This document shows, in pieces, positions 8,675-42,338 of a stretch of 64,000 nt of DNA (position 1 is the stretch's first letter; every line of letters starts with the position of its first letter). The notes under the pieces are model-generated. The model ran no database searches and had not been told where the DNA came from. It was given only the letters and a program-made list of their open reading frames with translations. The DNA comes from Haliotis rubra (Eukaryota), in NCBI RefSeq assembly GCF_003918875.1, contig NW_025767313.1, positions 1,302,001 through 1,366,000 of the forward strand, read 5' to 3'. The position numbers were made by a program, and so were the translations under genes.

Positions 8675-11600
8675 ACTGTACCAACAATTACAATGTGTAG
8701 AGTATATGCTGCAAGAATAATGTGCAACATGTGCTGCAAGTACAATGTGTAACATGTGTGTTGCAAGTATAATGTGTAAACGTGTATTCTGCAAGCACAA
8801 TGTGTAAGATGTGCGTTGCAAATAATAATGCATAACGTGTGTGCTGCAATTACAATGTGCACCGTGTGTGCTGCAATTACAATGTGTAACCTGTATTCTG
8901 CATGTACAATGTGCAACGTGTGTGCAGCAATTACAGTGTGTAACGTATGTGCAGCAATTACATTGTGTAACCTGTATTCTGCATGTACAATGTGTAACGT
9001 GTGTGCAGCAACTACAATGTGTAACCTGTATTCTGCATGTACAATCTGCAACGAGTGTGCAGCAATTACAGTGTGTAACGTATGTGCAGCAATTACATTG
9101 TGTAACCTGTATTCTGCATTTAGGATGTGTAACGTGAGTGCAGCAATTACAATGTGTAACCTGTATTCTGCATGTACAAGGTGCAACGTGTGTGCAGCAA
9201 TTACAATGTGTAACCTGTATTCTGCATGTACAAGGTGCAACGTGTGTGCAGCAAATACAGTGTGTAACGTATGTGCAGCAAGTACAATGTGCAACGTGTG
9301 TGCTGCAAGTACAGTGTGTAACGTATCTGCAGCAAGTACAATGTGCAACGTGTGTGCTGCAAGTACAATGTGTAACGTGTGTGCTGCAAGTACAATGTGT
9401 ACATGTGTGTAACGTGTGTGCAGCAAGTACAATGTGCAACGTGTGTGCAGCACTTACAATGTTTAACCTGTATTCTGCATGTACAATGTGTTACGTGTGT
9501 GCAGTAATTACAATGTGTAACCTGTATTCTGCATGTACAATGTGTTACGTGTGTGCAGCAATTACAATGTGTAACCTGTATTCTGCATGTACAATGTGTT
9601 ACCTGTGTGCAGCAATTACAATGTTTAACCTGTATTCTGCATGTACAATGTGTTACCTGTGTGCAGCATTTACAATGTGTAATCTGTATTCTGCATGTAC
9701 AATGTGTTACGTGTGTGCAGCAATTACAATGTGTAACCTGTATTCTGCATGTACAATGTGTTACGTGTGTGCAGCAATTACAATGTTTAACCTGTATTCT
9801 GCATGTACAATGTGTTACGTGTGTGCAGCCATTACAATGTGTAACCTGTATTCTGCATGTACAATGTGTTACGTGTGTGCAGCAATTACAATGTGTAACG
9901 TGAGTGTTGCACGTACAATGTGTTACGTGTGTGCAGCAATTACAATGTGTAACCTGTATTCTGCAATTACAATGTGTTACGTGTGTGCAGCAATTACAAT
10001 GTTTAACCTGTATTCTACATGTACAATGTGTTGCGTGTGTGCAGCAATTACAATGTGTTACGTGTGTACAGCAATTACAATGTGTAACCTGTATTCTGCA
10101 TGTACAGTGTGTTACGTGTGTGCAGCAATTACAATGTGTAACCTGTATTCTGCAATTACAATGTGTTACGTGTGTGTAGCAATTACAATGTTTAACTTGT
10201 ATTCTGCATGTACAATGTGTTACGTGTGTGTAGCAATTACAATGTTTAACCTGTATTCTGCATGTACAATGTGTTACGTGTGTGCAGCAATTACAATGTG
10301 TAACCTGTATTCTGCAATTACAATGTGTTACGTGTGTGCAGCAATTACAATGTTTAACCTGTATTCTGCATGTACAATGTGTTACGTGTGTGCAGCAATT
10401 ACAATGTGTTACGTGTGTGCAGCAATTACAATGTGTAACCTGTATTCTGCAATTACAATGTGTTACGTGTATGAAGCAATTACAATGTGTAACCTGTATT
10501 CTGCATGTACAATGTGTTACGTGTGTGCAGCAATTACAATGTTTAACCTGTATTCTGCATGTACAATGTGTTACGTGTGTGCAGCAATTACAATGTGTAA
10601 CCTGTGTTCTGCAATTACAATGTGTTACGTGTGTGCAGCAATTACAATGTTTAACCTGTATTCTGCAATTACAATGTGTTACGTGTGTGCAGCAATTACA
10701 ATGTGTAACCTGTATTCTGCATGTACAATGTGTTACGTGTGTGCAGCAATTACAATGTTTAACCTGTATTCTGCATGTACAATGTGTTACGTGTGTGCAG
10801 CAATTACAATGTTTAACCTGTATTCTGCATGTACAATGTGTTACGTGTGTGCAGCAATTACAATGTGTAACCTGTATTCTGCATGTACAATGTGTTACGT
10901 GTGTGCAGCAATTACAATGTTTAACCTGTATTCTGCATGTACAATGTGTTACGTGTGTGCAGCAATTACAATGTGTTACGTGTGTGCAGCAATTACAATG
11001 TGTAACCTGTATTCTGCAACCTGTACAATGTGTTACGTGTGTGAAGCAATTACAATGTGTAACCTGTATTCTGCATGTACAATGTGTTACGTGTGTGCAG
11101 CAATTACAATGTTTAACCTGTATTCTGCATGTACAATGTGTTACGTGTGTGCAGCAATTACAATGTGTAACCTGTGTTCTGCAATTACAATGTGTTACGT
11201 GTGTGCAGCAATTACAATGTTTAACCTGTATTCTGCAATTACAATGTGTTACGTGTGTGCAGCAATTACAATGTGTAACCTGTATTCTGCAATTACATGT
11301 AACCTGTATTGTGTTACGTTACGATGTGTGCAGCAATTACAATGTTTAACCTGTATTCTGCATGTACAATGTGTTACGTGTGTGCAGCAATTACAATGTT
11401 TAACCTGTATTCTGCATGTACAATGTGTTACGTGTGTGCAGCAATTACAATGTGTAACCTGCATTCTGCATGTACAATGTGTTACGTGTGTGCAGCAATT
11501 ACAATGTTTAACCTGTATTCTGCATGTACAATGTGTTACGTGTGTGCAGCAATTACAATGTTTAACGTATGTGCTGCTAGTACAATTTGTAGCATGTGTG

Positions 11601-11825
11601 TAGCAAATATGTGTAGCAAATTATAAAATGGAATGTGTGTGTATTGCAAATGCTATGGGTAAATATGTGTTGCAAGTACAATGTGTAACGTGAGTGTTGG
11701 AAATAATAATGCATAACGTGTGTGCTTCAAGTACAATGTTTAACGTGTGTGCTGCAAATACAATATTTAACGTATATGTTGCAAGTGCAATGTGTAATGT
11801 GTGTACTGCAAATACAATGTGTAAG
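8675..11825. repeat. 27-bp minisatellite with 54-bp dimeric higher-order unit
   Basis: Alternating TACAATGTGTTACGTGTGTGCAGCAAT / TACAATGTGTAACCTGTATTCTGCATG monomers. Degenerate flanks extend to ~8400 and ~11930. Confidence 0.97.
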
Positions 11826-16979: not shown

Positions 16980-19900
16980 TAAGGCGGAAGGATGGACACA
17001 TTTCCCTGACAATCCAATCAAACAAGACACGGGATAAACAGCTATTCTATCAGTGCGAGATGAGCACAGGATTGACACATGGTAGATCGTACTAGCAATG
17101 TAACACAGGATGGGCACAGGAGCTAGACCATCTAGACACTGTATACTCAAAGAAGGGTCACATTTGCTGGACCATCTATTCACTATAGTCACAGGAGTTT
17201 ACCTACTTGCTTGGGCATCCATACACTATCGTTAGCTAGACCGTTGATTAGCTATTGACGCACATCCCATACTAGCCAGCCAACGTAACCCATGAATGAA
17301 TGTGCAAGACCATCCTAGCACCATATGTACAGGATGGACACACGTGCTGGCCAACCCAAGCACTCTACACACAGGATGATACACGTGGCACTCTACACAC
17401 AGGATGGCCACACATGCTAGCCAACACAAGCACTCTTCACACAGGGTGGACACACATGCTAGCCAATCCAGGCACTCTACACACAGGATGGACACACATG
17501 CTAGCCAATCCAGGCACTCTACACACAGGATGGACACCCATGCTCGACAACTCTGGCACTCTAGACACCGGATGGACACACATGCTGGCCAACCCAGGTA
17601 CTCTACACACAGGATGGGCACATATGCTATGTCATCCAAGCACGATCAACGGGGGATAGATACATGTGCTGGACCACTGAAGACACACGATTGACACACA
17701 CCCTCCACCACCTGGTCAGTATAAACACAGATTGGGGACATGCGCTAGACAAGCTGGAGACTACTGAAAAAGGGAAGGACACATATACAACACCACCAAT
17801 GCAGCACAGGAGGGACCCAATTGCTTGCGCATCTAGGCATAATGATGAGCTCGACCATGGATTCACTATAAACAAACATCCTAGATAACAGTGGCATTGT
17901 AAACACATAAAGCACAAATGTGTAAGACCACCCTAGCACTAGAAACACAAGATGGGCACATGTGTAAGACCATCCTAGCACTAGAAACACAAGATGGGCA
18001 CATGTGTAAGACCACCCTAGCACTAGAAACACAAGATGGGCACATGTGTAAGACCATCCTAGCACTAGAAACACAAGATGGACAGATGTATAAGACCATC
18101 TCCTGGCACTAGAAACACAAGATGGACACATGTGTAAGACCATCCTAGCACTAGAAACACAAGATGGACACATGTGTAGGACCATCCTAGCACTAGAAAC
18201 ACAAGATGGGCACATGTGTAAGACCATCCTAGCACTAGAAACACAAGATGGGCACATGTGTAAGACCATCCTAGCACTAGAAACACAAGATGGACACATG
18301 TATAAGACCATCTCCTAGCACTAGAAACACAAGATGGACACATGTGTAAGACCATCTCCTGGCACTAGAAACACAAGATGGACACATGTGTAGGACCATC
18401 CTAGCACTAGAAACACAAGATGGGCACATGTGTAAGACCATCCTAGCACTAGAAACACAAGATGGACACATGTGTAGGACCATCTCCTGGCACTAGAAAC
18501 ACAAGATGGACACATGTGTAGGACCATCCTAGCACTAGAAACACAAGATGGGCACATGTGTAAGACCATCCTAGCACTAGAAACACAAGATAGACACATG
18601 TGTAAGACCATCCTAGCACTAGAAACACAAGATTGACACATGTGTAAGACCATCCTAGCACTAGAATTACAAGATGGACACATGTGTAAGACCATCCTAC
18701 CACTAGAAACACAAGATGGGCACACGTGTAAGACCATCCTAGCACTAGAAACACAAGATGGAAACATGTGTAAGACCATCCTAGCACTAGAAACACAAGA
18801 TGGGCACACGTGTAAGACCATCCTACCACTAGAAACACAAGATGGGCACACGTGTAAGACCATCCTAGCACTAGAAACACAAGATGGAAACATGTGTAAG
18901 ACCATCCTAGCACTAGAAACACAAGATAGGCACATGTGTAAGACCATCCTAGCACTAGAAACACAAGATGGACACATGTGTAAGACCATCCTAGCACTAG
19001 AAACACAAGATGGACACATGTGTAAGACCATCCTAGCACTAGAAACACAAGATGGACACATGTGTAAGACCATCCTAGCACTAGAAACACAAGATGGACA
19101 CATGTGTAAGACCATCCTAGCACTAGAAACACAAGATGGACACATGTGTAAGACCATCCTAGCACTAGAAACATAAGATGGACGCATGTGTAAGACCATC
19201 CTAGCACTAGAAACACAAGATGGACACATGTGTAAGACCATCATAGCACTAGAAACACAAGATGGGCACACGTGTAAGACCATCCTAGCACTAGAAACAC
19301 AAGATGGACACATGTGTAAGACCATCCTAGCACTAGAAACACAAGATGGGCACATGTGTAAGACCATCCTAGCACTAGAAACACAAGATGGGCACATGTG
19401 TAAGACCATCCTAGCACTAGAAACACAAGATGGACACATGTGTAAGACCATCCTAGCACTAGAAACACAAGATGGGCACATGTGTAAGACCATCCTAGCA
19501 CTAGAAACACAAGATGGACACATGTGTAAGACCATCCTAGCACTAGAAACACAAGATGGACACATGTGATAGATCGTACTTGGAATATTGAAACAGGTGT
19601 TAGCCCATCCAGGGCCTTTAAATAAATGATGGACACATATATCAGGACCTCCAAGCATGATCGACAGAGAATAGATACGTATGATGAACTTTTGACAAAG
19701 GATTGATACACATCATGGACCATCCAGGCAACATTGACACAAGATAAACCCATGTGCTACGCCATCTAGGCACTATAGGCACATATAGGAGAGCATCCAG
19801 GCACTATCGACAACGAATGAGCCAACATTCTAGGTCATCCAAGAACTATCGACAGAGGGACGCGTATACCATACGTTGGTTTACTATAGGCGTCCATCTT

Positions 19901-22159: not shown

Positions 22160-22331
22160 CTGCGTGATGATGGCGCGGCTCTGGTAGCCTAGCAACGAAT
22201 TCCCAAGACCCTGTAACGTCATCCAGCACAGAGATTTCATCACACACTGGCTCTGACTTGAGTCTTGGAGCGCCACCTACGACCACAAGGCAATCTCTAT
22301 GAGCAGGAGCTCTGGGAACGGTTCGCGAAGT
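22160..22331 (-). CDS. Kelch-like protein, coding exon 3 (linker and first Kelch repeat)
   Basis: Acceptor ttttcttctctcattgcag; encodes TSRTVPR...CLVVVGG...WEFVARLPEPRHHHA; donor gtgtgt. The phase-0 join to exon 2 gives TLLQ|TSRTVPR, typical of KLHL proteins. Confidence 0.9.
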
Positions 22332-23037
22332 CTGCAATGAGAGAAGAAAAACCAATACAATAAATATCAGCTAGAACACTTGTCAAAGTGAAACAAAAAT
22401 GAGTTTTTTTAATGTAGGAAATAAATAACTGTTTGAGACGGAATACTGCCCTTTAGTAAAAACTTGGGGATTTATGAGACATACTATGAGAATATGCACC
22501 CAGCTGTAAACATGCACGCATTTACACTGCTAATGTAATTAAAGCTCGCGAACACACTGAACAGTAAATGTCACTAGATATGTAGCCCGGTAGAGAGTAG
22601 GTGTACAGTTCTTTCATTGAAATAACTTGCTGTGTAAGCTTTGATCGACAAGCCAGCCAGGTTCACCTGGTATGCACTCATTCTTGGGATTTAGCGGCCG
22701 CTTCAGACAATACATGAGTTTTGTGGCAGGAAATTCCAGTGGAAAAAATTTGCAATATTTAATTTGATTTTGTTTTAAGGATAGTATATTGTTTTGGCAA
22801 TTAAATGATATAAAGTTTCATTAGGTATTTGTAGATGTTAAATCTAAAAATATTTTATAACAGTAAAGAGGAAATGGTGTTACCTTGAAGGCTACTCTCA
22901 TTCATGAGGATCTGAAATCAATCGTGATATCACACTCTGTGCACTCTAATTCCGACGTGCATTAATGTTATGTACCCCGCCGAAAGGCGAACAAATATGG
23001 CACGGTGGTGAAATCAACTCGAAACTATTGTGGTGCA

Positions 23038-25426: not shown

Positions 25427-26430
25427 TACATACAGACAGGACGTGTGACCGGTACATACAGATAAAGACAGGACGTGTGACCGGAACATACAGATAAGGA
25501 CAGGACGTGTGACATGTACAGGTGGATAAGGATAGGAAGTGTGACCGGTACATACAGATAAGGACAGGACGTGTTACCTGTACATCCAGATAAGGACAGG
25601 ACGTGAGACATGTACATACGGATAAGGACAGGACATGTGACCAGTACATACAGATCAGAACAGGGCGTTTGACCGGTACATACAGATAAAGACAGGACGT
25701 GTGACCGGTACATACAGATAAGGACAGGATGTGTGACCGGTACATACAGATAAAGACAGGACGTGTGACCGGTACATACAGATAAGGACAGGACGTGTGA
25801 CCAGTACATACAGATAAGGACAAGACGTGTGACCGGTATATACAGATAAGGACAGGACGTGTGACCGGTACATACAGGTAAGGACAGGACGTGTGACCAG
25901 TACATACAGATATGGACAGGACGTGTGACTGGTGCGTACAGATAAGGACAGGACGTGTGACCAGTACATACAGATAACGATATGATGTGTGACCGGTACA
26001 TACGGATAAGGATAGGACGTGTGACCGGTACATACAGATAAGGACAGCATGTGTGACCGGTACATACAGATAAGGACAGGACGTGTGACCTGTACAGGGC
26101 GATAAGGACAGGACGTGAGACCTGTTCAGGCGGATAAGGATATGACTTGTGACCTGTACAGGCCGATAAGACAGGACGTGTGACCTGTACAGGCCGATAA
26201 GGACAGGACGTGAGACCTGGACAGGCCGATAAGGACAGGACGTGTGACCAGTACATACAGATAAGGACAGGACGTGTGACCAGTACATACAGATAAGGAC
26301 AGGACGTGTGACCAGTACATACAGATAAGGACAGGACGTGAGACCTGTACAGGCGGATAAGGACAACGTGTACATGTACAGACGGATAAGGACAACGTGT
26401 ACCTGTACAGACGTGTGACCTGTACAGATG
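25427..26430. repeat. 32-bp minisatellite
   Basis: Unit CATACAGATAAGGACAGGACGTGTGACCGGTA, ~30 copies, with a CTGTACAGGCCGATAAG variant toward the right end. Confidence 0.96.
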
Positions 26431-29969: not shown

Positions 29970-31555
29970 CATACCTCCCTGCTGGCCAAAGGTAACCCGA
30001 CTCTCACCCATACCTCTCTGCTGGCCAAAGGTAACCCGACTCGCACCCATACCTCCCTGCTGGCCAAAGGTAACCCGACTCGCACCCATACCTCCCTGCT
30101 GGCCAAAGGTAAGCCGACTCTTTCTTTAAAACTCGCACCCATACCTCCCTGCTGGCCAAAGGTAACCCGACTCTTTCTTTAAAATTCGCACCCATACCTC
30201 CCTGCTGGCCAAAGGTAACCCGACTCTCACCCATACCTCTCTGCTGGCCAAAGGTAAGCCGACTCTTTCTTTAAAACTCGCACCCATACCTCCCTGCTGG
30301 CCAAAGGTAAGCCGACTCTTTCTTTAAAATTCGCACCCATACCTCCCTGCTGGCCAAAGGTAACCCGACTCTCACCCATACCTCCCTGCTGGCCAAAGGT
30401 AACCCGACTCTCACCCATACCTCTCTGCTGGCCAAAGGTTACCCGACTCGCACCCATACCTCCCTGCTGGCCAAAGGTAACCCGACTCTCACCCATACCT
30501 CCCTGCTGGCCAAAGGTAACCCGACTCTTTCTTTAAAACTCGCACCCATACCTCCCTGCTGGCCAAAGGTAACCCGACTCTTTCTTTAAAACTCGCACCC
30601 ATACCTCCCTGCTGGCCAAAGGTAACCCGACTCTTTCTTTAAAACTCGCACCCATACCTCCCTGCTGGCCAAAAGTAACCCGACTCTTTCTTTAAAACTC
30701 TCACCCATACCTCCCTGCTGGCCAAAGGTAACCCGACTCTTACTTTAAAACTCTCACCCATACCTCCCTGCTGGCCAAAGGTAAGCCGACTCTTTCTTTA
30801 AAACTCGCACCCATACCTCCCTGCTGGCCAAAGGTAAGCCGACTCTTTCTTTAAAATTCGCACCCATACCTCCCTGCTGGCCAAAGGTAACCCGACTCTC
30901 ACCCATACCTCTCTGCTGGCCAAAGGTTACCCGACTCGCACCCATACCTCCCTGCTGGCCAAAGGTAACCCGACTCTCACCCATACCTCCCTGCTGGCCA
31001 AAGGTAACCCGACTCGCACCCATACCTCCCTGCTGGCCAAAAGTAACCCGACTCTTTCTTTAAAACTCGCACCCATACCTCCCTGCTGGCCAAAGGTAAC
31101 CCGACTCTTTCTTTAAATCTCGCACCCATACCTCCCTGCTGGCCAAAGGTAAGCCGACTCTTTCTTTAAAACTCGCACCCATACCTCCCTGCTGGCCAAA
31201 GGTAACCCGACTCTTTCTTTAAAACTCGCACCCATACCACCCTGCTGGCCAAAAGTAACCCGGCTCTTTCTTTAAAACTCTCACCCATACCTCCCTGCTG
31301 GCCAAAGGTAACCCGACTCTTTCTTTAAAACTCGCACCCATACCTCCCTGCTGGCCAAAGGTAACCCGACTCTTTCTTTAAAACTCGCACCCATACCTCC
31401 CTGCTGGCCAAAGGTAACCCGACTCTTTCTTTAAAACTCGCACCCATACCTCCCTGCTGGCCAAAGGTAACCCGACTCTTTCTTTAAAACTCGCACCCAT
31501 ACCTCCCTGCTGGCCAAAGGTAACCCGACTCTTTCTTTAAAACTCGCACCCATAC
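29970..31555. repeat. Minisatellite with interspersed 39-bp and 53-bp units
   Basis: Core CCCATACCTCCCTGCTGGCCAAAGGTAACCCGACTC, with or without a 14-bp TTTCTTTAAAACTC insert. Confidence 0.97.
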
Positions 31556-32389: not shown

Positions 32390-34095
32390 GGGTGAGCATT
32401 GCTTGTGTGCAAACATCTGTCTTGATGACTTTATTTATTAACATAGATCTCACTGCATTATCATTGTGTGCAACATCTGTCTTGAATTACGTTTTTGCAT
32501 AATATAGAGCTCATTGCATTATCATTGTGTGCAAACATCTGTCTTGATGACTATATTTATTAACATAGAGCTCACTGCATTGTCATTGTGTGCAAACATC
32601 TGCCTTGATGACTTTATTTATTAACATGGAGCTCATTGCATTATCATTGTGTGCAAACATCTGTCTTGATGACTTTATTTATTAACATGGAGCTCATTGC
32701 ATTATCATTGTGTGCAAACATCTGTCTTGATGACTTTATTTATTAACATAGAGCTCATTGCATTATCATTGTGTGCAACATCTGTCTTGAATTACGTTTT
32801 TGCATAACATAGAGCTCATTGCATTATCATTGTGTGCAACATCTGTCTTGAATTACGTTTTTGCATAACATAGAGCTCATTGCATTATAATTGTGTGCAA
32901 ACATCTGCCTTCATGACTTTATTTATTAACATGGAGCTCATTGCATTATCATTGTGTGCAAACATCTGTCTTGAATTACTTTACTTATCGACAAAGAGCT
33001 CATCCTATAAACATTACTTTACGTATTGGCAAAGAGCTCATCCTATAAACATTACTTTATTTATTGACAAAGAGCTCATCCTATAAACATTACTTTATTT
33101 AATGACAAATAGCTCATCCTATAAACATTACTTTACGTATTGGCAAAGAGATCATCCTATAAACACTACTTTATTTATTGACAAAGAGTTCATACTACAA
33201 ACATTACTTTACTTATTGACAAAGAGCTCATCGTATAAACATTACTTTACTTATCGACAAAGAGCTCATCCTACAAACATCAATTTACTTATTGACAAAG
33301 AGCTCATCGTATAAACATTACTTTACTTATCGACAAAGAGCTCATCCTACAAACATCAATTTACTTATTGACAAAGAGCTCATCCTATAAACATTGTGTG
33401 CAAATGTCTGGCTTGAAGTACCTGAACTTTCCTTCTTGACATAAAACTCGTCACACTGTTTCGCGTGCAAACATTGGCCTTGAACTACTTTACATGCCGA
33501 CCTGGAGCTCACCACATTAACATGGTGTGCAAACATTGGCCTTGAACTACTGTACATGCCGACCTGGAGCTCACCACATTAACATGGTGTGCAAACATTG
33601 GCCTTGAACTACTTTACATGCCGACCTGGAGCTCACCACATTAACATGGTGTGCAAACATTGACCTTGAACTACTTTACATGCCGACCTGGAGCTCACCA
33701 CATCAACATGGTGTGCAAACAATGGCCTTGAACTACTTTACATACCGACCTGGAGCTCACCACATTAACATGGTGTGCAAACATTGGCCTTGAACTACTG
33801 TACATGCCGACCTGGAGCTCACCACATTAACATGGTGTGCAAACATTGGCCTTGAACTACTTTACATGCCGACCTGGAGCTCACCACATTAACATGGTGT
33901 GCAAACATTGGCCTTGAACTACTGTACATGCCGACCTGGAGCTCACCACATTAACATGGTGTGCAAACATTGGCCTTGAACTACTGTACATGCCGACCTG
34001 GAGCTCACCACATTAACACGGTGTGCAAACATTGGCCTTGAATTACTGTACATGGCGACCTGGAGCTCACCACATTAACACGGTGTGCAAACACC
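32390..34095. repeat. Compound satellite: 61-bp, 38-bp and 62-bp sub-arrays
   Basis: 61-bp units at 32390-32990, 38-bp units at 32990-33400 and 62-bp units at 33460-34095. All share GAGCTCA and AAACAT. Confidence 0.93.
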
Positions 34096-34599: not shown

Positions 34600-34830
34600 G
34601 CTAGACTTCCTGTCTTTTAGGACCGGTCGATTCAAGGTCAGATTCTAGCTCTAAACGAAGGTCCCTGTCTAATAGAACCGATCCTTTGTCAGATTCTAGC
34701 CCAAAACAAAGCTTCCTGTCTAATATAACCACTCCTTTGTCTGATTCTAGCTCAACACAAAGCTTCCTGTCTAACAGAACGGACCTTATCACAGAGTTCA
34801 GCTCATGTACAAGGCTTCATGTCTAATTGG
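34600..34830. repeat. ~51-bp degenerate tandem repeat, ~4 copies
   Basis: Recurring GATTCTAGCT...CTTCCTGTCTAA...CCTTTGTC. Confidence 0.8.
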
Positions 34831-34945
34831 ACCAAACTATATCTCACTGTACAAAGTAGGGCTGACCCTACTCTGAGTAAGGATTCCTATCTCTAGGACC
34901 CATCGTATATATGTAAGCTTCTAGTGTCTGTGCAAGACTTCCTAC

Positions 34946-35505
34946 CTGCAGCAGCGTCTGACGGGCCGGCATACAGTGGTAATGGAGGGCCTCCTTCACA
35001 AGCTTCTGGCAATCTGGGATGTCCATTAAGAAGGTAACAGACTCGACTCTGTCCACGATCTCAGATGGACTCAGAAGTGGGAGGCGGACTGTCTTCAACA
35101 GGTCGTACGCGAACTCCAGACGGTGTTGCCGATCCACTTCGATCCATTCCAACACACGATGGAAAACAAACACCTCACTTCTGGTGACGAGGTCATCACG
35201 GGTCAACAGACAAATCAGTTGTTCTACTGGCATAGACTTAAATTCTACTTTCCTGGAAACTGTTTCAAAATGGCTGGCAGCAATTGCTGACGATATTTCT
35301 GTCAAACGATCAAGGACGTGGGTGACCGATAGGTCCAATAGTGACAAACAGTTGTCCACATTGAGATGGTCGCTTAGGTATTCCTCACACGCTTCGTGGA
35401 TTCCTAGAAACCCCAGAACTGAGGCTGCTGCCAGTATATCACGGACGTTCACGTCAGATAACTGCAGTCGCCCTGTGTACAGACACTCCAGAATAGCCTG
35501 CAAAC
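34946..35505 (-). CDS. Kelch-like protein, coding exon 2 (C-terminal BTB and BACK domain)
   Basis: Acceptor ctctatctctgtgttgcag; encodes GLQAILECLYTGRLQLS...NVDNCL...SEVFVFHRVLEWIEVD...VRLPLLSP...EALHYH; donor CAG|gtagga. 560 nt; the phase-1 start matches the exon 1 end. Confidence 0.93.
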
Positions 35506-36595
35506 CTGCAACACAGAGATAGAGTGGTTCAGCAGTCGGCCTGTATACAGACACTCCAGAATAGCCTGCAAACCTGTAACACAGAGATAGAGCGGTACAG
35601 CAGGTGGCCTGTATACAGACACTCCAGAATAGCCTGCAAACCTGTAACACGGAGATAGAGTGGTTCAGCAGTCGCCCTGTGTACAGACACTCCAGAATAG
35701 CCTGCAAACCTGTAACACGGAGATAGAGTTGTTCAGCAGTCGCCCTGTGTACAGACACTCCAGAATAGCCTGCAAACCTGTAACACGGAGATAGAGTTGT
35801 TCAGCAGTCGGCCTGTATACAGACACTCCAGAATAGCCTGCAAACCTGGAACACAGAGATAGAGTGGTTCAGCAGTCGGCCTGTGTACAGACACTCCAGA
35901 TTAGACTGCAAACCTGTAACACGGAGATAGAGTGGTTCAGCAGGTGGCCTGTATACAGACACTCCAGAATAGCCTGCAAACCTGTAACACAGAGATAGAG
36001 TGGTTCAACAGTCGGCGTGTATACAGACACTCCAGAATAGCCTGCAAACCTCTAACACGGCCTGTATACGGACACTTCAGGTTCTACAGGAGGCCTGTGT
36101 GGAGAAACTTCAGATTACCCAGCACCCCTTCTACAAGGATATGGAGTGGTTCAGCAGGGGCCTGTATGCATAAACTTCAAATTACCCAGCAACCTTGCAA
36201 CTCAGAGATTGAGTGGTTCAGCAGGAGGCCTGTATACAGAAATGTCAGGTTAAACTGCAACCTTGCAACTCAGATACGGAGTGGTTCAGAAGGGGGCCTG
36301 TATACAGAAATGTCAGGTTACACTCTAACCTTGCAACTCAGATATGGAGTGGTACAGCAGGATGCCTGTATACAGAAATTTCAGGTTAAACTGCAACCTT
36401 GCAACTTAGAGATGGAGTGGTTCAGTAGGGGGGCTGCATACAGGAATTTCAGGTTAAACCGCAACCTTGCAACTCAGATATGGAGTGGTTCAGCAGGAGG
36501 CCTGTATACAGAAATTTCAGGTTAAACTGCAACCTTGCAACTCAGATATTGAGTGGTTCAGCAGGAGGCCTGTATACAGAAATTTCAGATTAAAC
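35467..36595. repeat. 68-bp tandem array containing the Kelch exon-2 splice acceptor and the first ~40 nt of the exon
   Basis: AGACACTCCAG recurs at 35481, 35549, 35617, 35685, 35753, 35821, 35889, 35957 and 36025. Diverged 68-bp units continue to ~36595. Confidence 0.95.
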
Positions 36596-36705
36596 ATGAT
36601 GCATGAGTACATGATGCAGACACTTCAGATTCACCAACACAGGTTTGGGAGTACATGATGCAGACACTTCAGATTCACCAACACAGGTTTGGGAGTACAT
36701 GATCC
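36596..36705. repeat. 44-bp tandem duplication
   Basis: GAGTACATGATGCAGACACTTCAGATTCACCAACACAGGTTTGG, twice plus a partial copy. Confidence 0.85.
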
Positions 36706-38757
36706 AGCACGAGAATGGGAGTGAGGTGGATAGAGGGCGCATAAAGGTTTTCTACACAGTTAGTTTTTCGGGATTTACGCCGCTGTGAGCAATATTTCAG
36801 CAACTTCAAGACAGTCAACAGCCCGCCCCGTTAATCAACTCTCCTGATTGTATACAAAATAAATCAATGTCCTTTGAGGTCTTGGTTCATTCCATGGAAT
36901 ATACAATGTGGAATTATTGTCAGCTGGTCTTTAAAGTACGTACGGCTGTGAATGCATTCCGAATAGCAGCTTGAGTGGGGTATAAAATACCATCTCCAGC
37001 TTGCAGGACCACAAATTCCCGTCACTGTATTTTGTGTTTATTCTGTCATTGAGATTTAGTGTTAGGACAAATCAGAGTAATTTCTCCTTATATTCCAGCA
37101 CTTTGAAACATTCAAGCGTCTTGAACTGGTTGTACAGTACAATATGTCAACTAATGCTTGCAGATAATACAAGATATGTGTAGAGATTTAAAAAATCCGA
37201 TATCGTTCGTCATATCGCCATGATCTCTGATTGAAGACGACGCCTAGTTCCTGGATAGCTGACAGCTGACAGACCCGTTGTGCAGTCGTCCCTATGTGAT
37301 GCTAAAGAGATCATTCGTCTGACTGCATGTCTGAATCGGGGGTGGATTCCAAATTATCGAGTCTGGGCGAGGATACCAGATCACATACTTACATGCATGA
37401 TTATCTATCAACGCAATCGGGACACGATGACCAACTACTTCTAGGTCACACTTTGACCTCGTAATTCTGCCCACGAATATTCTAGATATAAGACTTATTC
37501 TTCTTTAGTAAATCAACGGTTAAGGAACAAATCTGGGGTCTCGTGGCTTCACTCACTCTCTCATGTTCCGATGACACTGCAGAGATAACGTACACAAATC
37601 ATACATGCGTACATTCGCGTTACGTCTTGTGCGCATACTGTGATTTGGTACCGCATTTCGAGATATCCCGAGCTATTCCGAAAACGGCCGACTGACTTTT
37701 TGTAATTCACGGAAACAGACAAATGGTGATCGTCTTTGTCTGCATCGATTGTATACATGGTCATCCCTTAAAGGTCAACATATTCAATAAGTTCCTGGGA
37801 GCAGGAAGTTGTCACGAATGACCTTTAACCACCGACGGAAGATAAATGAATTTGAAAGATAACCCTTTGATATCATGAAAAGTCTCATTTTGGCATTGAC
37901 ATACACTAAGAAAATTCTTTGTTCGCGTGCTACGTTAACCAAGTGTTATTTGGCCCTCACAGACAGAGCGTTCGTCTTTCATCCGGCGGTATCAGTCATA
38001 TCGTTTAACCATTCACTGTTAAGGTAGATAGGACTGCCATTACCCCGTGTATTTCAAAGAACTGAAATTGTTTTTGTTACAATGGATTTTAAAGTGGAAA
38101 AATGAGTTTACGCCATTTTCAATTTGGGAGGATGAAATACTAAATAATCATTTAATATTTTCAGGTCGAAACAAATTTAACACCCCCAAATGTAGAGACA
38201 TGGCTATCTCAACAGGTAGTCTTAAAGAGAGGGCAGGTGAAAGACGGAATAAATCAAATATTTTTTTATCCTAAAACTATTCACACATATTGTTACCTGT
38301 CACATCAGATATTTTGAAACGTAAATTTAGACGTCTAGGCAGTAGGCAACTGGAAATATATGGCATAACACATATCAAATTTTAACAGTCCTTAAGAATA
38401 ACGTGTCTTAAGATGCTCAGTCTAGTCATGAAACTAACAAGTATACGTGGAATTTGCATCTCATCATTCCAGTTAAGATGATAAATAAATCTGAATGACG
38501 TCAATTAAATATGATCGGTTGTATCACTGTCCTATAACTGTCGATTTCAATGGTACTTAATGACAGGGTGCTATAACATATCTGCATGATTTTATTGTTA
38601 ATTTGATCAGATCGTGTACTTGCTCATGCCAATGGCGAAAATTTAATATGCTTTTTAATAACATGTATCAGATAGACTGAGCACAGGAGAACGCCCGAAG
38701 GTTCGAATATGAAACTGAAGCTTAAAACGGCCCTCTTGCCCACACAAACTGACCTTG

Positions 38758-39477
38758 GCGTTTTGCGCATCTTGCATGCTTAAATACATGTACCACCGTT
38801 TTGCGTATCTTGCATGCTTAAATACATGTACCACCGTTTTGCGTATCTTGCATGCTTAAATACATGTACCACCGTTTGCGTATCTTGCATGCTTAAATAC
38901 ACGTACCACCGTTTTGCGTATCTTGCATGCTTAAATACATGTACCACCGTTTGCGTATCTTGCATGCTTAAATACATGTACCACCGTTTTGCGTATCTTG
39001 CATGCTTAAATACATGTACCACCGTTTGCGCATCTTGCATGCTTAAATACATGTACCACCGTTTGCGTATCTTGCATGCTTAAATACATGTACCACCGTT
39101 TGCGCATCTTGCATGCTTAAATACATGTACCACCGTTTGCGTATCTTGCATGCTTAAATACATGTACCACCGTTTGCGTATCTTGCATGCTTAAATACAT
39201 GTACCACCGTTTGCGTATCTTGCATGCTTAAATACATGTACCACCGTTTTGCGTATCTTGCATGCTTAAATACATGTACCACCGTTTGCGTATCTTGCAT
39301 GCTTAAATACATGTACCACCGTTTGCGTATCTTGCATGCTTAAATACATGTACCACCGTTTGCGTATCTTGCATGCTTAAATACATGTACCACCGTTTGC
39401 GCATCTTGCATGCTTAAATACATGTACCACCGTTTGCGTATCTTGCATGCTTAAATACATGTACCACCGTTTTGCGC
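38758..39477. repeat. 37/38-bp minisatellite, ~19 near-identical copies
   Basis: CGTTT(T)GCGTATCTTGCATGCTTAAATACATGTACCAC. Confidence 0.97.
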
Positions 39478-40039
39478 TAGCAAGTCCAGGGCAGTAAAGC
39501 TGACAAAAAGTAGAAGAATATTTTAACAGCCATGGCTGTATGTACAATGTCAGGCGCTCACAGAGCCAGCTTGTAATCAAATAAAATATTGTCTAGACTA
39601 TATTGGTTTGCTAATACATTCCTTTCTACAGAAGACGAATGAACGGCGCACGTTATCCCCAAACATACAAATATATATCTATCTATATGTATATATCTAC
39701 TCCTATTCCGCTGTAAGTCATGTATCCTTGTAAAACTGTCCATAATCGATTTCGGGGGCGTTTGTGCTGTGTTATCTTTATGCATGACAACCATACAGTT
39801 TTTAACACAGAGCTGAGTTAATGATAGCACAGTGTGGAGGGCAAATCACATTTCAGATGAGAAGTAAATTATTCGGACGTCATAAGAGGCGTTTGTAGTG
39901 GGTTCTCTAAATACTACTTTCATGTTTTCATACAAAAACAGAAGTAAGAGAGAGATTAGGCTATTACATTCAAGTACGCACTTGTGCAGCTGCTTGTACA
40001 AGTCTACACTGTAAAGAGCTAGCTCACTGAGATACCATA

Positions 40040-40210
40040 CCGGGGTTTAACACAGACACATCACTCGGTCACAGTACTCTTCCACTGGGCCAAACAGGGA
40101 GCGCCAGGCATAGTAAACTTAAGTTCCATCTATAATGCCCATGGACAGGGGATCGAACCACCGACTCTCCTCTCTCTGGGTAGACGCACTATCCACTACA
40201 CCATCGCCGA
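40040..40210 (-). mobile_element. Degenerate tRNA-derived SINE, different family
   Basis: Minus-strand head GGCGATGGTGTAGTGGATAGTG...GGTTCGATCCC, followed by non-tRNA sequence. Confidence 0.55.
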
Positions 40211-40501
40211 AGAGTACATATCATGTGACCTGACAGATACTATTCAGGGCCCCTTTCACAAAGCTATCGTAGCGCTGTGACTGTCGTAAGTCTAGGATGC
40301 TCCGAAGGTGCTGTATGAAATCAATCAGTGGTGAGTCTAATTCAAACTGAACATGTTATACCGTTGTGGCCATTTGTAATGTGGTTGATGTCATGCATTC
40401 TGTCTGAGGGTCACACAGTGTCGACCACTATTTCATATACGTCCCCCACACGTCCCCCGATACTCCACATGGTCCACATAGCTTGACCCTCAAACGTTGA
40501 A

Positions 40502-40618
40502 GGGGAGGTTGGTAACCCAGTGGTTAAAACGTTTGCTCGTCACGCCGAAGACCGGGTTCGATCCCCCACATGGGTAACATATGTGAAGCCCATTTCTAAA
40601 AGTGGCGTAAAACTAAAT
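40502..40618 (+). mobile_element. SINE family B, internally deleted
   Basis: GGTAACCCAGTGGTTAAAACG...GGTTCGATCCCCCACATGGG...GGCGTAAAACTAAA. Confidence 0.8.
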
Positions 40619-41174
40619 GTTGAAAGCTTGAGGCAACAGAACCGTAAAGATTCGAATTGAGAAACGACATGGCAGAACAGACATACCCCATGTTGCAATA
40701 TATGATCTTCGACCTCGTAGGATACAATGCTCCTACAAATCACATTTTGTACTGCTACGAATTCCCACAGTATGAGAGTGGGAAAAGGTCGGTGCCAACA
40801 TTGACATTACAGAAGAGTTCCTTTAAGAAACATTTATGTTTTGGTTAAGCTGAAGTGTAGCAATTCATATTTATATAGGTACGTGTACCCCCATAATATG
40901 TATTTATTCTTCCCTGCCTATAATTTGATGATGCATAGTCAAAACATCGCCATATATAAGTCAAAGCTTTGCGCTAACCCCTAATTCTTTTATCCCGTGT
41001 TATATTATTACGTATTGCCTTGGAAACTGACCTGTGTATGTGGCATTGACAAAATGACGAAATGGACATGAAGATTTGTCCGGACAGTAAACTGATTGGA
41101 TTGGCAGCGGTTGTAGTAACATGTAAATACGCTTCTACGTTCAGCTACATACTTGGCCTCGCTTCCACACTCAC

Positions 41175-41583
41175 CCGTGGCCTTGACATCATTCAGCTCC
41201 ACCTTGCTAGCTTCCGCGTCGTGACCCCGGGTGAACTTGTCGTAGAAGAAGTCGGAACAAGACGCCAAGACCAGTTTATGAGCCAGGTAGGTTTTATTTT
41301 CGACCACTACTGCGACGTCTGTCATCTGCTTGTGTTTCCATAAGGTCTCCAAACCCGACAAGATGCACTCTCCAATATGGGGGACGGTCTTACGATTTGT
41401 TTTGTCGTCAGGACCTGCCCTTGAACGGCGACGGTTGAGGATGGCTCGGTAGCTGTCTGTGGAAGCTACCGAATTAAGCGCACCCCGACTGGGGCGTTTA
41501 TTCATCCCTGCTCTTTGACCGCAGCCATACGTCCAGCATCTGTCCTTACTTCGGCATCCGTACGATTCCGAGTCTGACGTCAT
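41175..41583 (-). CDS. Kelch-like (BTB-BACK-Kelch, KLHL9/13/26-like by motif resemblance) protein, first coding exon seen (N-terminal BTB)
   Basis: ILSGLETLWKHKQMTDVAVVVENKTYLAHKLVLASCSDFF is a classic BTB start; donor ACG G|gtgagt. The start codon is uncertain (41583 or the downstream MNKRP Met). Confidence 0.88.
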
Positions 41584-41707: not shown

Positions 41708-41851
41708 NNNNNNNNNNNNNNNNNNNNNNNNNNNNNNNNNNNNNNNNNNNNNNNNNNNNNNNNNNNNNNNNNNNNNNNNNNNNNNNNNNNNNNNNNNNNN
41801 NNNNNNNNNNNNNNNNNNNNNNNNNNNNNNNNNNNNNNNNNNNNNNNNNNN
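41708..41851. other. Assembly gap (144 N)
   Basis: Run of n characters. Confidence 1.
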
Positions 41852-42338
41852 NTGTTAACCCATCTGTGATGTCATCATTTTATGCATACTTTATTCAGAG
41901 TATTTTAACATTTTCCCTCCACTGTTGGTACGGGACTCTCTCAGTTCATCTCAAATCTAAAATATACAAAATTGTTAATACTACAAGTAAAATCAGATTT
42001 AGGACTGGAGTCAGATTTGAATGTTTACCATCAATATATGAGCGACAAATCGTGAATCAAGCTGTCAAAATTATATCTGACCTAACTCACTACTTAAATT
42101 CGGAATCCAACCTCCTCCCTTCAGGCCGCCGCTACAAAGTTCCAATTGTGAAAACTAAGAGAGCCCGTACACCCTTTATTCCGAGTACCATATCTCTCTT
42201 AAACAAATGTGAAGATACCTAAATCAAAGAATTTATGTAAATATGTTTGGTATCTCTCTAATGTGTCAGTAGCTCTGCTGATGTAACACAAATTCCTGAA
42301 AAGGCATTAAAGTATTATTCTAATCTATTCTATTCTAA
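41852..42338 (+). mobile_element. 3' end of a Rex1/Babar-like (CR1/L2 group) LINE
   Basis: ORF 41866-42222 has FY..FIQSILTFS..CWYG...HYL....LLPSGRRY....KT.R....FIP..I.LLN, the C-terminal motif set of Rex1-type ORF2. It is followed by ATTAAAG and an (ATTCT)n tail. Confidence 0.85.

What the first reader, a model, noticed from the sequence alone, without database searches (positions are those of the whole stretch)
35467..36595. Splice-acceptor ladder: a 68-bp minisatellite built from the Kelch intron/exon-2 junction
Seen: on the gene strand each unit reads ctctatctcYgtgttNcag|GTTTGCAGGCTATTCTGGAGTGTCTG..., i.e. pyrimidine tract, AG and the first ~13 codons of the exon. About nine near-identical acceptors lie 68 nt apart (exon starts 35505, 35573, 35641, 35709, 35777, 35845, 35913, 35981, 36049), and older diverged units run to 36595. 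Only the most downstream site gives an intact BTB domain. Because 68 mod 3 = 2, two of every three upstream sites frameshift, while 35709 is in frame and stop-free (the 34868-35758 ORF runs through it) and would insert 68 aa into the BTB. Inference: the spliceosome must skip about eight decoys, so copy number could tune productive versus NMD-targeted transcripts, acting as a VNTR-encoded splicing rheostat. The true acceptor is the only one of the nine conserved units with TTGCAG; most others have TTACAG.
Basis: partly seen in the sequence, partly recalled or inferred. Interest (0 to 1): 0.8.

Follow-up and report, generated by a model that had tools for sequence, protein, structure and literature searches.

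The report
Splice-junction "mirage" minisatellite in abalone Kelch gene
The first intron of a blacklip-abalone Kelch gene ends in about 17 tandem copies of its own intron/exon junction, a known kind of repeat ("mirage" minisatellite) that three abalone species share and that gene models splice past, so it is most likely a tolerated by-product rather than a splicing dial.

Summary
A 68-bp x 16.3 array (35464-36580, minus-strand gene) is made of the last 27 nt of intron 1 plus the first 41 nt of exon 2 of a BTB-BACK-Kelch gene. The gene matches RefSeq XP_046545753.1 of Haliotis rubra. Eight units carry a full acceptor context. A ninth is truncated, and seven or eight older units have decayed.

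The "rheostat" reading is not supported.
- The RefSeq models of H. rubra, H. rufescens and H. cracherodii all join exon 1 to the last, exon-proximal acceptor.
- The array sits at the same place in H. cracherodii (32 units) and in H. asinina (3 units plus about 12 of a 59-bp derivative), so copy number varies about ten-fold around a conserved protein.
- The proposed TTGCAG/TTACAG discriminator fails. In H. cracherodii 17 decoys match the true site over 66 nt, and in H. asinina the true site is TTACAG.
- The stop-free in-frame decoy (35709) depends on one variant base and has no counterpart in H. cracherodii.

This is a "mirage" minisatellite, a kind described in amphioxus and mirrored on the donor side by the human F7 intron-7 VNTR. 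This scan has already found such arrays on other DNA of the same genome.

Two additions: the units evolve in concert with the real exon, and the host intron is absent from limpets, scallop and Lingula. No RNA reads were available.

The parts
41175..41583 (-). Exon 1 coding part (ATG 41583; 136 codons plus 1 base, phase 1). Encodes the N-terminal extension and the first half of the BTB domain. Donor ACGG|gtgagt.
   Evidence: It is 100% identical to residues 1-136 of RefSeq XP_046545753.1.
35506..41174 (-). Intron 1 (5669 nt). It splits the BTB domain, is present in three Haliotis species, and is absent from Lottia, Patella, Mizuhopecten, Lingula and one unidentified relative.
36087..36595 (-). 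Seven and a half older, diverged units (B type). CAA|G stands at the former acceptor position. They are about 70-75% like the young units.
36605..36707 (-). A 44-bp x 2.3 repeat, probably a degenerate derivative of the same unit (weak HMM matches only).
   Evidence: E about 0.4, so weak.
36009..36083 (-). A truncated ninth young unit (exon-like part intact, preceded by GAG, no pyrimidine tract) plus a 26-nt unit remnant.
35533..36007 (-). Seven young decoy units (k = 1-7). Each has a pyrimidine tract, CAG and 41 nt of exon-2-like sequence. Decoy exon starts: 35573, 35641, 35709, 35777, 35845, 35913, 35981.
35465..35532 (-). The terminal unit, which is the real junction: 27 nt of intron ending in ttgcag (AG at 35507-35506) plus the first 41 nt of exon 2.
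34946..35505 (-). Exon 2 (560 nt). Encodes the second half of BTB plus the BACK domain. Donor CAG|gtagga.
   Evidence: It matches residues 138-323 of the RefSeq protein.
22161..22337 (-). Exon 3, the start of the Kelch propeller. Later exons lie outside the window.
   Evidence: tblastn, 100% identity to residues 322-380.

Best explanation
This is a 'mirage' minisatellite, meaning a tandem array whose unit spans an intron/exon boundary.

Origin (inferred). The genome is very prone to minisatellites. Slippage or unequal exchange copied a 68-nt piece, 27 nt of intron 1 plus 41 nt of exon 2, upstream of exon 2 of a BTB-BACK-Kelch gene. The array has persisted since before the sampled Haliotis lineages split. 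It turns over by unequal exchange and gene conversion. As a result, the units of one species resemble each other and their own real exon more than they resemble the units of another species.

Selection (inferred). Only the terminal unit is under protein-level selection.

Splicing (inferred, not shown). The exon-proximal acceptor is chosen because it alone is continuous with the exon body and its downstream donor (exon definition). Occasional use of a decoy gives a frameshifted, stop-containing RNA that nonsense-mediated decay should remove.

Overall, the array is a tolerated by-product, not a regulatory device.
For: Anatomy of the unit and array.

Seamless BTB only with the acceptor at 35505.

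RefSeq proteins of H. rubra, H. rufescens and H. cracherodii read ...DVKAT-G-LQAILECLYTGRLQLSD with no insertion.

Orthologous arrays sit in collinear introns. H. cracherodii has 68 bp x 32. H. asinina has 3 units plus about 12 of a 59-bp derivative.

Concerted evolution. Unit identity is 0.93 and 0.96 within species against 0.82 between species. Decoys share the species-specific synonymous states of the real exon (GTTTG in rubra and asinina, GGCTG in cracherodii).

Purifying selection acts on the terminal unit only. The first 41 nt of exon 2 diverge like the rest of the exon (4/41 against 56/519). The older units have decayed.

About 23% of the window is tandem repeat, in roughly 15 arrays, so a junction-spanning array is not surprising here.

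The class is described in amphioxus, including an acceptor-side case in globin BflGb6, and is reported not to disturb splicing: PMC3087553 and PMC3902484. The donor-side analogue in human F7 uses only the exon-proximal site: PMC1557585.
Against: No RNA reads were seen. The only transcript-level evidence is three automatic RefSeq models.

The H. asinina model lacks the N-terminus and starts at a Met inside exon 2, so the canonical junction was not recovered there.

Classical duplicated-site experiments gave conflicting answers on which 3' site wins (discussed in PMC1557585), so silence of perfect decoys is not guaranteed.

The nearest decoys are damaged in two species. In H. rubra the branch-like motif is lost, and in H. 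asinina the AG is lost in two units. This hints that intact near decoys may carry a cost.
Confidence: 0.75

Rival explanations
1. Splicing rheostat. Decoy acceptors are used at an appreciable rate, so array length sets the ratio of productive to NMD-targeted transcripts and tunes expression of the Kelch gene.
For: Seven decoys in H. rubra and 29 in H. cracherodii keep an intact pyrimidine tract and CAG|G. Nearly all would give premature stops more than 400 nt upstream of the next exon junction. Array length differs among species.
Against: Gene models in three species show only the proximal junction. A ten-fold range in copy number coexists with a conserved protein. With 31 near-perfect decoys in H. 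cracherodii, even modest use per site would abolish expression. No decoy-spliced product was found in the protein collection searched with exon 1 (a weak negative). Amphioxus mirages and the F7 VNTR leave splicing intact.
Confidence: 0.1
2. Recursive-splicing ratchet. Each decoy is an AG|GT site, so exon 1 is spliced stepwise down the ladder, regenerating a donor at each step until the real exon is reached.
For: In H. rubra each unit reads CAG|GTTTGC, an acceptor abutting a GT.
Against: GTTTGC is a poor donor. In H. cracherodii the units read CAG|GGCTGC, and the 59-bp units of H. asinina read CAG|GGCTGC, so no GT would be regenerated. The feature is not conserved, although the array is.
Confidence: 0.03
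3. Relic of intron birth. Intron 1 arose by tandem duplication of an exonic segment holding a proto-splice site (the Rogers model, or the mirage-based model of Ebner et al.), and the array is what remains of that event.
For: Intron 1 is found only in Haliotis among the orthologues examined, while four downstream introns are shared by all. The unit junction reads ACAG|GT and the mRNA junction reads ACGG|GT. The model is proposed in PMC3087553.
Against: Neither the first 100 nt of the intron nor the last 60 nt of exon 1 resembles the unit more than random intron windows do (score 7.5 against a null mean of 8.2). The unit family occurs only next to exon 2. Other mirages noted by the scan in this genome lie at ordinary junctions, so no special link is needed.
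Confidence: 0.08
4. Assembly artefact. The array or its length is a mis-assembly of a shorter repeat.
For: Minisatellites are hard to assemble, and the H. rubra copy number cannot be verified without reads.
Against: Units carry distinct variants in a non-periodic order. Independent assemblies of H. cracherodii and H. asinina have arrays at the orthologous site with collinear flanks.
Confidence: 0.03

Closest known systems
Amphioxus 'mirage' minisatellites (Adh3, globins BflGb6 and BflGb9, troponin C, PGBD5). Sources: Canestro et al. 2002 as cited in PMC3087553, and PMC3902484.
   Same: Tandem repeats whose unit spans an intron/exon boundary and carries the splice signal. The authentic copy lies at the end of the array. 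BflGb6 is the same acceptor-side layout (3' end of the intron plus 5' part of exon 2). Both show length variation and concerted evolution within clusters, and normal splicing is reported.
   Different: This one is in a mollusc, not a cephalochordate. It is retained at one orthologous site in three species that differ by about 10% in the adjacent exon. It goes up to 32 units with 17 decoys identical to the true site over 66 nt. Here splicing is known only from gene models, not from RT-PCR.
Human F7 intron-7 37-bp VNTR (PMC1557585).
   Same: The first monomer of the minisatellite contains the exon/intron junction, so identical pseudo-sites line up beside the real one. Only the exon-proximal site is used, although the others are functional. 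Position, not sequence, decides.
   Different: F7 repeats the donor (5' splice site) and has 5-9 copies. This array repeats the acceptor with branch-like motif and pyrimidine tract. F7 has minigene experiments behind it, and this locus has none.
Recursive splice sites (ratchet points) of long introns.
   Same: In H. rubra an acceptor AG directly abuts a GT.
   Different: The GT context is weak, and the GT is absent in H. cracherodii and in the main H. asinina units. Nothing suggests stepwise intron removal.
Intron gain by tandem duplication of an AGGT-containing exon segment (the Rogers model, discussed in PMC3087553).
   Same: A lineage-specific intron is associated with tandem copies of a junction that reads AG|GT.
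   Different: The donor end of the intron shows no homology to the unit. The intron is 5.7 kb and mostly unrelated sequence.

Membership tests
Mirage minisatellite | Head-to-tail minisatellite array (unit of tens of bp). | tested here: met
   Period 68, 16.3 copies. 18 HMM matches in register.
Mirage minisatellite | The unit spans an exon/intron boundary and includes the splice signal. | tested here: met
   The unit is 27 nt of intron ending in CAG plus 41 nt of exon 2. The exon part encodes the conserved BTB motif LQAILECLYTG, which is also present in intronless orthologues, so the exon is the source.
Mirage minisatellite | The authentic junction is the terminal copy and forms part of the transcript. 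| tested here: met
   The RefSeq protein joins residue 136 (exon 1) through a split Gly codon to exon 2 at 35505. Pfam BTB is seamless.
Mirage minisatellite | Regular splicing is not disturbed by the repeated sites. | tested here: inconclusive
   Three species' gene models use the real site. No RNA reads were available. The H. asinina model lacks the N-terminus.
Mirage minisatellite | Length instability and concerted evolution of units. | tested here: met
   Unit counts of 3+12, 17 and 32 in three species. Identity is 0.93-0.96 within species against 0.82 between. Polymorphism within a species was not testable.
   This needs junction reads and genotypes. The indirect evidence is negative.
   In H. 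cracherodii decoys and the true site are all TTGCAG. In H. asinina the true site is TTACAG.
Recursive splice site | A conserved AG|GT(R)AGT junction that regenerates a donor after the first splice. | tested here: not met
   GTTTGC in H. rubra. GGCTGC (no GT) in H. cracherodii and in the 59-bp units of H. asinina.
Intron gained by tandem duplication (Rogers) | The donor-side intron sequence, or the end of exon 1, is homologous to the duplicated unit. | tested here: not met
   Local alignment score of 7.5 against a null of 8.2 +/- 1.6 from 84 intron windows. Old age could have erased a signal.

The most novel reading that the evidence does not exclude
The abalone arrays are a natural experiment showing that 3' splice-site choice can be purely positional. 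In H. cracherodii 17 decoys are identical to the true site from -27 to +39, yet the model uses only the last one. That would be the mirror image of the F7 donor rule.

In addition, the host intron is a Haliotis-lineage gain, and the real exon's first 13 codons are drawn into the array's concerted evolution. Junction minisatellites may therefore both follow intron gain and drive synonymous change in coding sequence.
Probability: 0.15. Interest if true: 0.6.

Novelty: new member of a known kind. Interest (0 to 1): 0.3.

Why it matters
As a regulatory device it would have been striking, but the evidence points to a tolerated by-product of a known type.

Its value is as a model. Three abalone species offer graded arrays (3, 17 and 32 units) of near-perfect or perfect acceptor copies in one conserved gene. 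That is a ready-made test of how the spliceosome picks the exon-proximal 3' splice site, the counterpart of the human F7 donor array.

It also matters in practice. Such arrays can mislead gene prediction. The H. asinina model lacks its N-terminus, and the H. rubra gene is split into two models.

Finally, it shows that coding sequence at an exon edge can be homogenised with non-coding copies.

Tried and rejected
1. Recursive-splicing ratchet. Rejected because the GT after the decoy AG is missing in H. cracherodii and in the main H. asinina units.

2. TTGCAG as the mark of the true site. Rejected by the cross-species comparison.

3. A functional in-frame 68-aa insertion isoform from 35709. The open frame depends on the single CTGTACC variant of unit 1. 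No decoy in H. cracherodii is stop-free.

4. Intron born from the duplication. No similarity was found between the unit and the intron 5' end or the end of exon 1. No unit copies occur elsewhere in the window or in the orthologous loci.

5. The unit as a dispersed repeat or transposon-borne satellite. The HMM finds it only at the array.

6. Search for transcripts.
   - The word search with exon 2 found no abalone product in its length range.
   - The word search with exon 1 found only a genomic ORF reading into the intron (P0220).
   - The big representative search gave only relatives of 53% identity or less. It served to reach the scallop protein and, through it, the abalone RefSeq proteins.

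7. The original mirage paper (PMC117041) is not held. It is cited through PMC3087553.

Exons were searched apart by reference, and frames of decoy use were computed from each acceptor without joining.

9. The N run at 41708-41852 was left as it is.

Full report
**What is there.** On the minus strand the window carries the first three exons of a BTB-BACK-Kelch gene.
- Exon 1 runs from the ATG at 41583 to 41175 and ends ACGG|gtgagt in phase 1.
- Exon 2 runs from 35505 to 34946.
- Exon 3 lies at 22337-22161.
- Pfam places BTB profile positions 2-61 in exon 1, and positions 64-109 plus a full BACK domain in exon 2. Joining 41175 to 35505 therefore gives a seamless BTB domain.
- The exon translations are identical to RefSeq XP_046545753.1, 'kelch-like protein 20 [Haliotis rubra]'. 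Residues 1-136 are exon 1, residue 137 is the split Gly codon, and residues 138-323 are exon 2. The single L/M difference is the tool's start-codon rule.
- That protein is encoded in assembly GCA_003918875.1. The window is therefore blacklip abalone, as earlier notes of this scan had said.

**The array.**
- Tandem Repeats Finder reports a 68-bp unit, 16.3 copies and 85% matches at 35464-36580.
None is expected by chance.
- On the gene strand each young unit is 27 nt of intron followed by 41 nt that are 0-4 mismatches from the real start of exon 2. The intron part holds a CTGAAC branch-like motif 24 nt before the junction, a 71-76% pyrimidine tract, and CAG.
- Eight units (k = 0-7) have this full context. 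The ninth (36049) keeps the exon-like part but is preceded by GAG and has no pyrimidine tract.
- Upstream lie seven and a half older units (36087-36595) with CAA|G at the old junction, and then faint remnants.
- A profile HMM of the unit finds it nowhere else in the 64-kb window.

**Consequences of decoy use.** These were computed from each acceptor without joining exons.
- Six of the eight decoys stop 110-122 nt after the acceptor because the frame shifts.
- The decoy at 35913 is in frame but hits a stop.
- Only 35709 is in frame and open. That holds only because unit 1 reads CTGTACC where other units read CTGAACC, which removes the TGA that closes the other paths.
- All stops lie far upstream of the exon-2 donor. 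If mollusc NMD follows the exon-junction rule (an inference), such RNAs would be degraded.

**Related sequences.** The word searches with single exons cannot see full-length relatives, so the route was indirect.
- I used the representative search to reach a scallop orthologue (P0003).
- From it I reached the abalone RefSeq proteins, then their cluster and their loci.
- H. rufescens and H. cracherodii proteins (617 aa) read ...VNDVKATGLQAILECLYTGRLQLSDV, the same junction as in H. rubra with no insertion.
- The H. asinina model (416 aa) starts at a Met inside exon 2 and says nothing about the junction.

**The array is shared by the three species.**
- H. cracherodii (L005): intron 1 ends in 32 units of 68 bp, 96% alike. 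The real exon starts at 9503.
- In that species 29 of 31 decoys keep CAG|G. Seventeen have all 27 intronic bases identical to the true site and differ from it only from position +40 on. None of the 31 decoys gives a stop-free path.
- H. asinina (L004): three units of 66-68 bp adjoin exon 2, preceded by about 12 units of a 59-bp derivative. The true site there is TTACAG. The two nearest decoys have lost the AG (cat|G, cac|G).
- The intron flanks are collinear among the three species, so these arrays are orthologous and the array is not an assembly artefact.
In H. cracherodii nothing within 66 nt of the junction separates the true site from 17 of the decoys.

**Mode of evolution.**
- Units are 93% (H. 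rubra) and 96% (H. cracherodii) alike within a species, but 82% alike between species.
- Decoys share the species-specific synonymous states of the real exon: GTTTG in H. rubra and H. asinina, GGCTG in H. cracherodii.
- The TAT..GGC variant is decoy-only in H. rubra but is the real exon's state in H. cracherodii. Two H. rubra decoys carry the real exon's TAC..GGG.
- This pattern is what exchange between the terminal unit and the rest of the array would produce (an inference).
- The first 41 nt of exon 2 diverge at the same rate as the rest of the exon (4/41 against 56/519 between H. rubra and H. cracherodii). The encoded peptide is invariant in four species.
- Decoys, by contrast, carry changes that would be non-synonymous, and old units have decayed. 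Selection therefore sees only the terminal unit.

**Background.**
- About 23% of this window is tandem repeat, in some 15 arrays. An array that reaches a junction is not in itself improbable here.
- Arrays born wholly inside an exon would be lost. Those spanning a junction survive if the terminal copy still splices.

**The host intron.**
- Intron 1 is absent from the orthologues of Lottia, Patella, Mizuhopecten, Lingula and one unidentified relative. Four downstream introns sit at homologous positions in all of them.
- One gain in the Haliotis lineage is more parsimonious than three or more losses.
- I tested whether the intron could descend from the duplication itself. Neither its 5' end nor the end of exon 1 resembles the unit more than random intron windows do.

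**Comparison with what is known.**
[quoted passage not shown] They were later found in amphioxus globins, troponin C and PGBD5.
- Globin BflGb6 has exactly this acceptor-side layout, shows allelic length differences and concerted evolution, and splices normally (PMC3087553; PMC3902484).
- The human F7 intron-7 VNTR is the donor-side counterpart. Experiments there show that the pseudo-sites are functional, yet only the exon-proximal one is used (PMC1557585).
- My searches of the held library found no report of mirages in molluscs.
- Earlier follow-ups of this scan filed several other junction arrays of this same genome under the same heading.

**Verdict.**
The structural reading is right. The rheostat is unsupported, and some of its specific props are refuted.
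- The most likely account is a tolerated mirage minisatellite whose exon-proximal acceptor is chosen by position or exon definition, with NMD as a backstop.
- The splicing step is inferred from gene models and from precedent, not from RNA reads.

Noticed in passing
window 35506-41174; L003, L007, L008, L009, L001: The BTB-splitting intron 1 exists in three Haliotis species but not in the Lottia, Patella, scallop, Lingula or one unidentified orthologue. Four downstream introns are shared by all, so this is probably a lineage-specific intron gain. Scallop has its own extra intron at residue 217.
   Followed up: partly
L004 10001 (H. asinina) and the H. rubra RefSeq models: The H. asinina RefSeq protein (416 aa) starts at a Met inside exon 2, although exon 1 is intact in the genome. 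The H. rubra gene is split into a 466-aa model and an adjacent 213-aa Kelch model. Junction arrays or very long introns (about 75 kb) may be confusing automatic annotation.
   Followed up: no
window 35573; L004 9590-9665: The decoys nearest the real acceptor are damaged in two species. In H. rubra the branch-like CTGAA is lost, and in H. asinina the AG is lost in the two nearest units. In H. cracherodii they are not damaged. This is a possible sign of selection against near decoys, but it is anecdotal.
   Followed up: partly
window 1-64000: Roughly 23% of the window is minisatellite, in about 15 arrays with periods of 27-106 bp (for example 8685-11824, 17387-19568, 25435-26409, 29970-31555, 32403-34093, 38762-39477).
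   Followed up: no
window 41708-41852: A run of 145 N lies about 125 nt upstream of the start codon of exon 1 (promoter or 5' UTR region).
   Followed up: no
window 34637-34827: A 51-bp x 3.7 repeat lies about 120 nt into intron 2, close to but not spanning the exon-2 donor.
   Followed up: no
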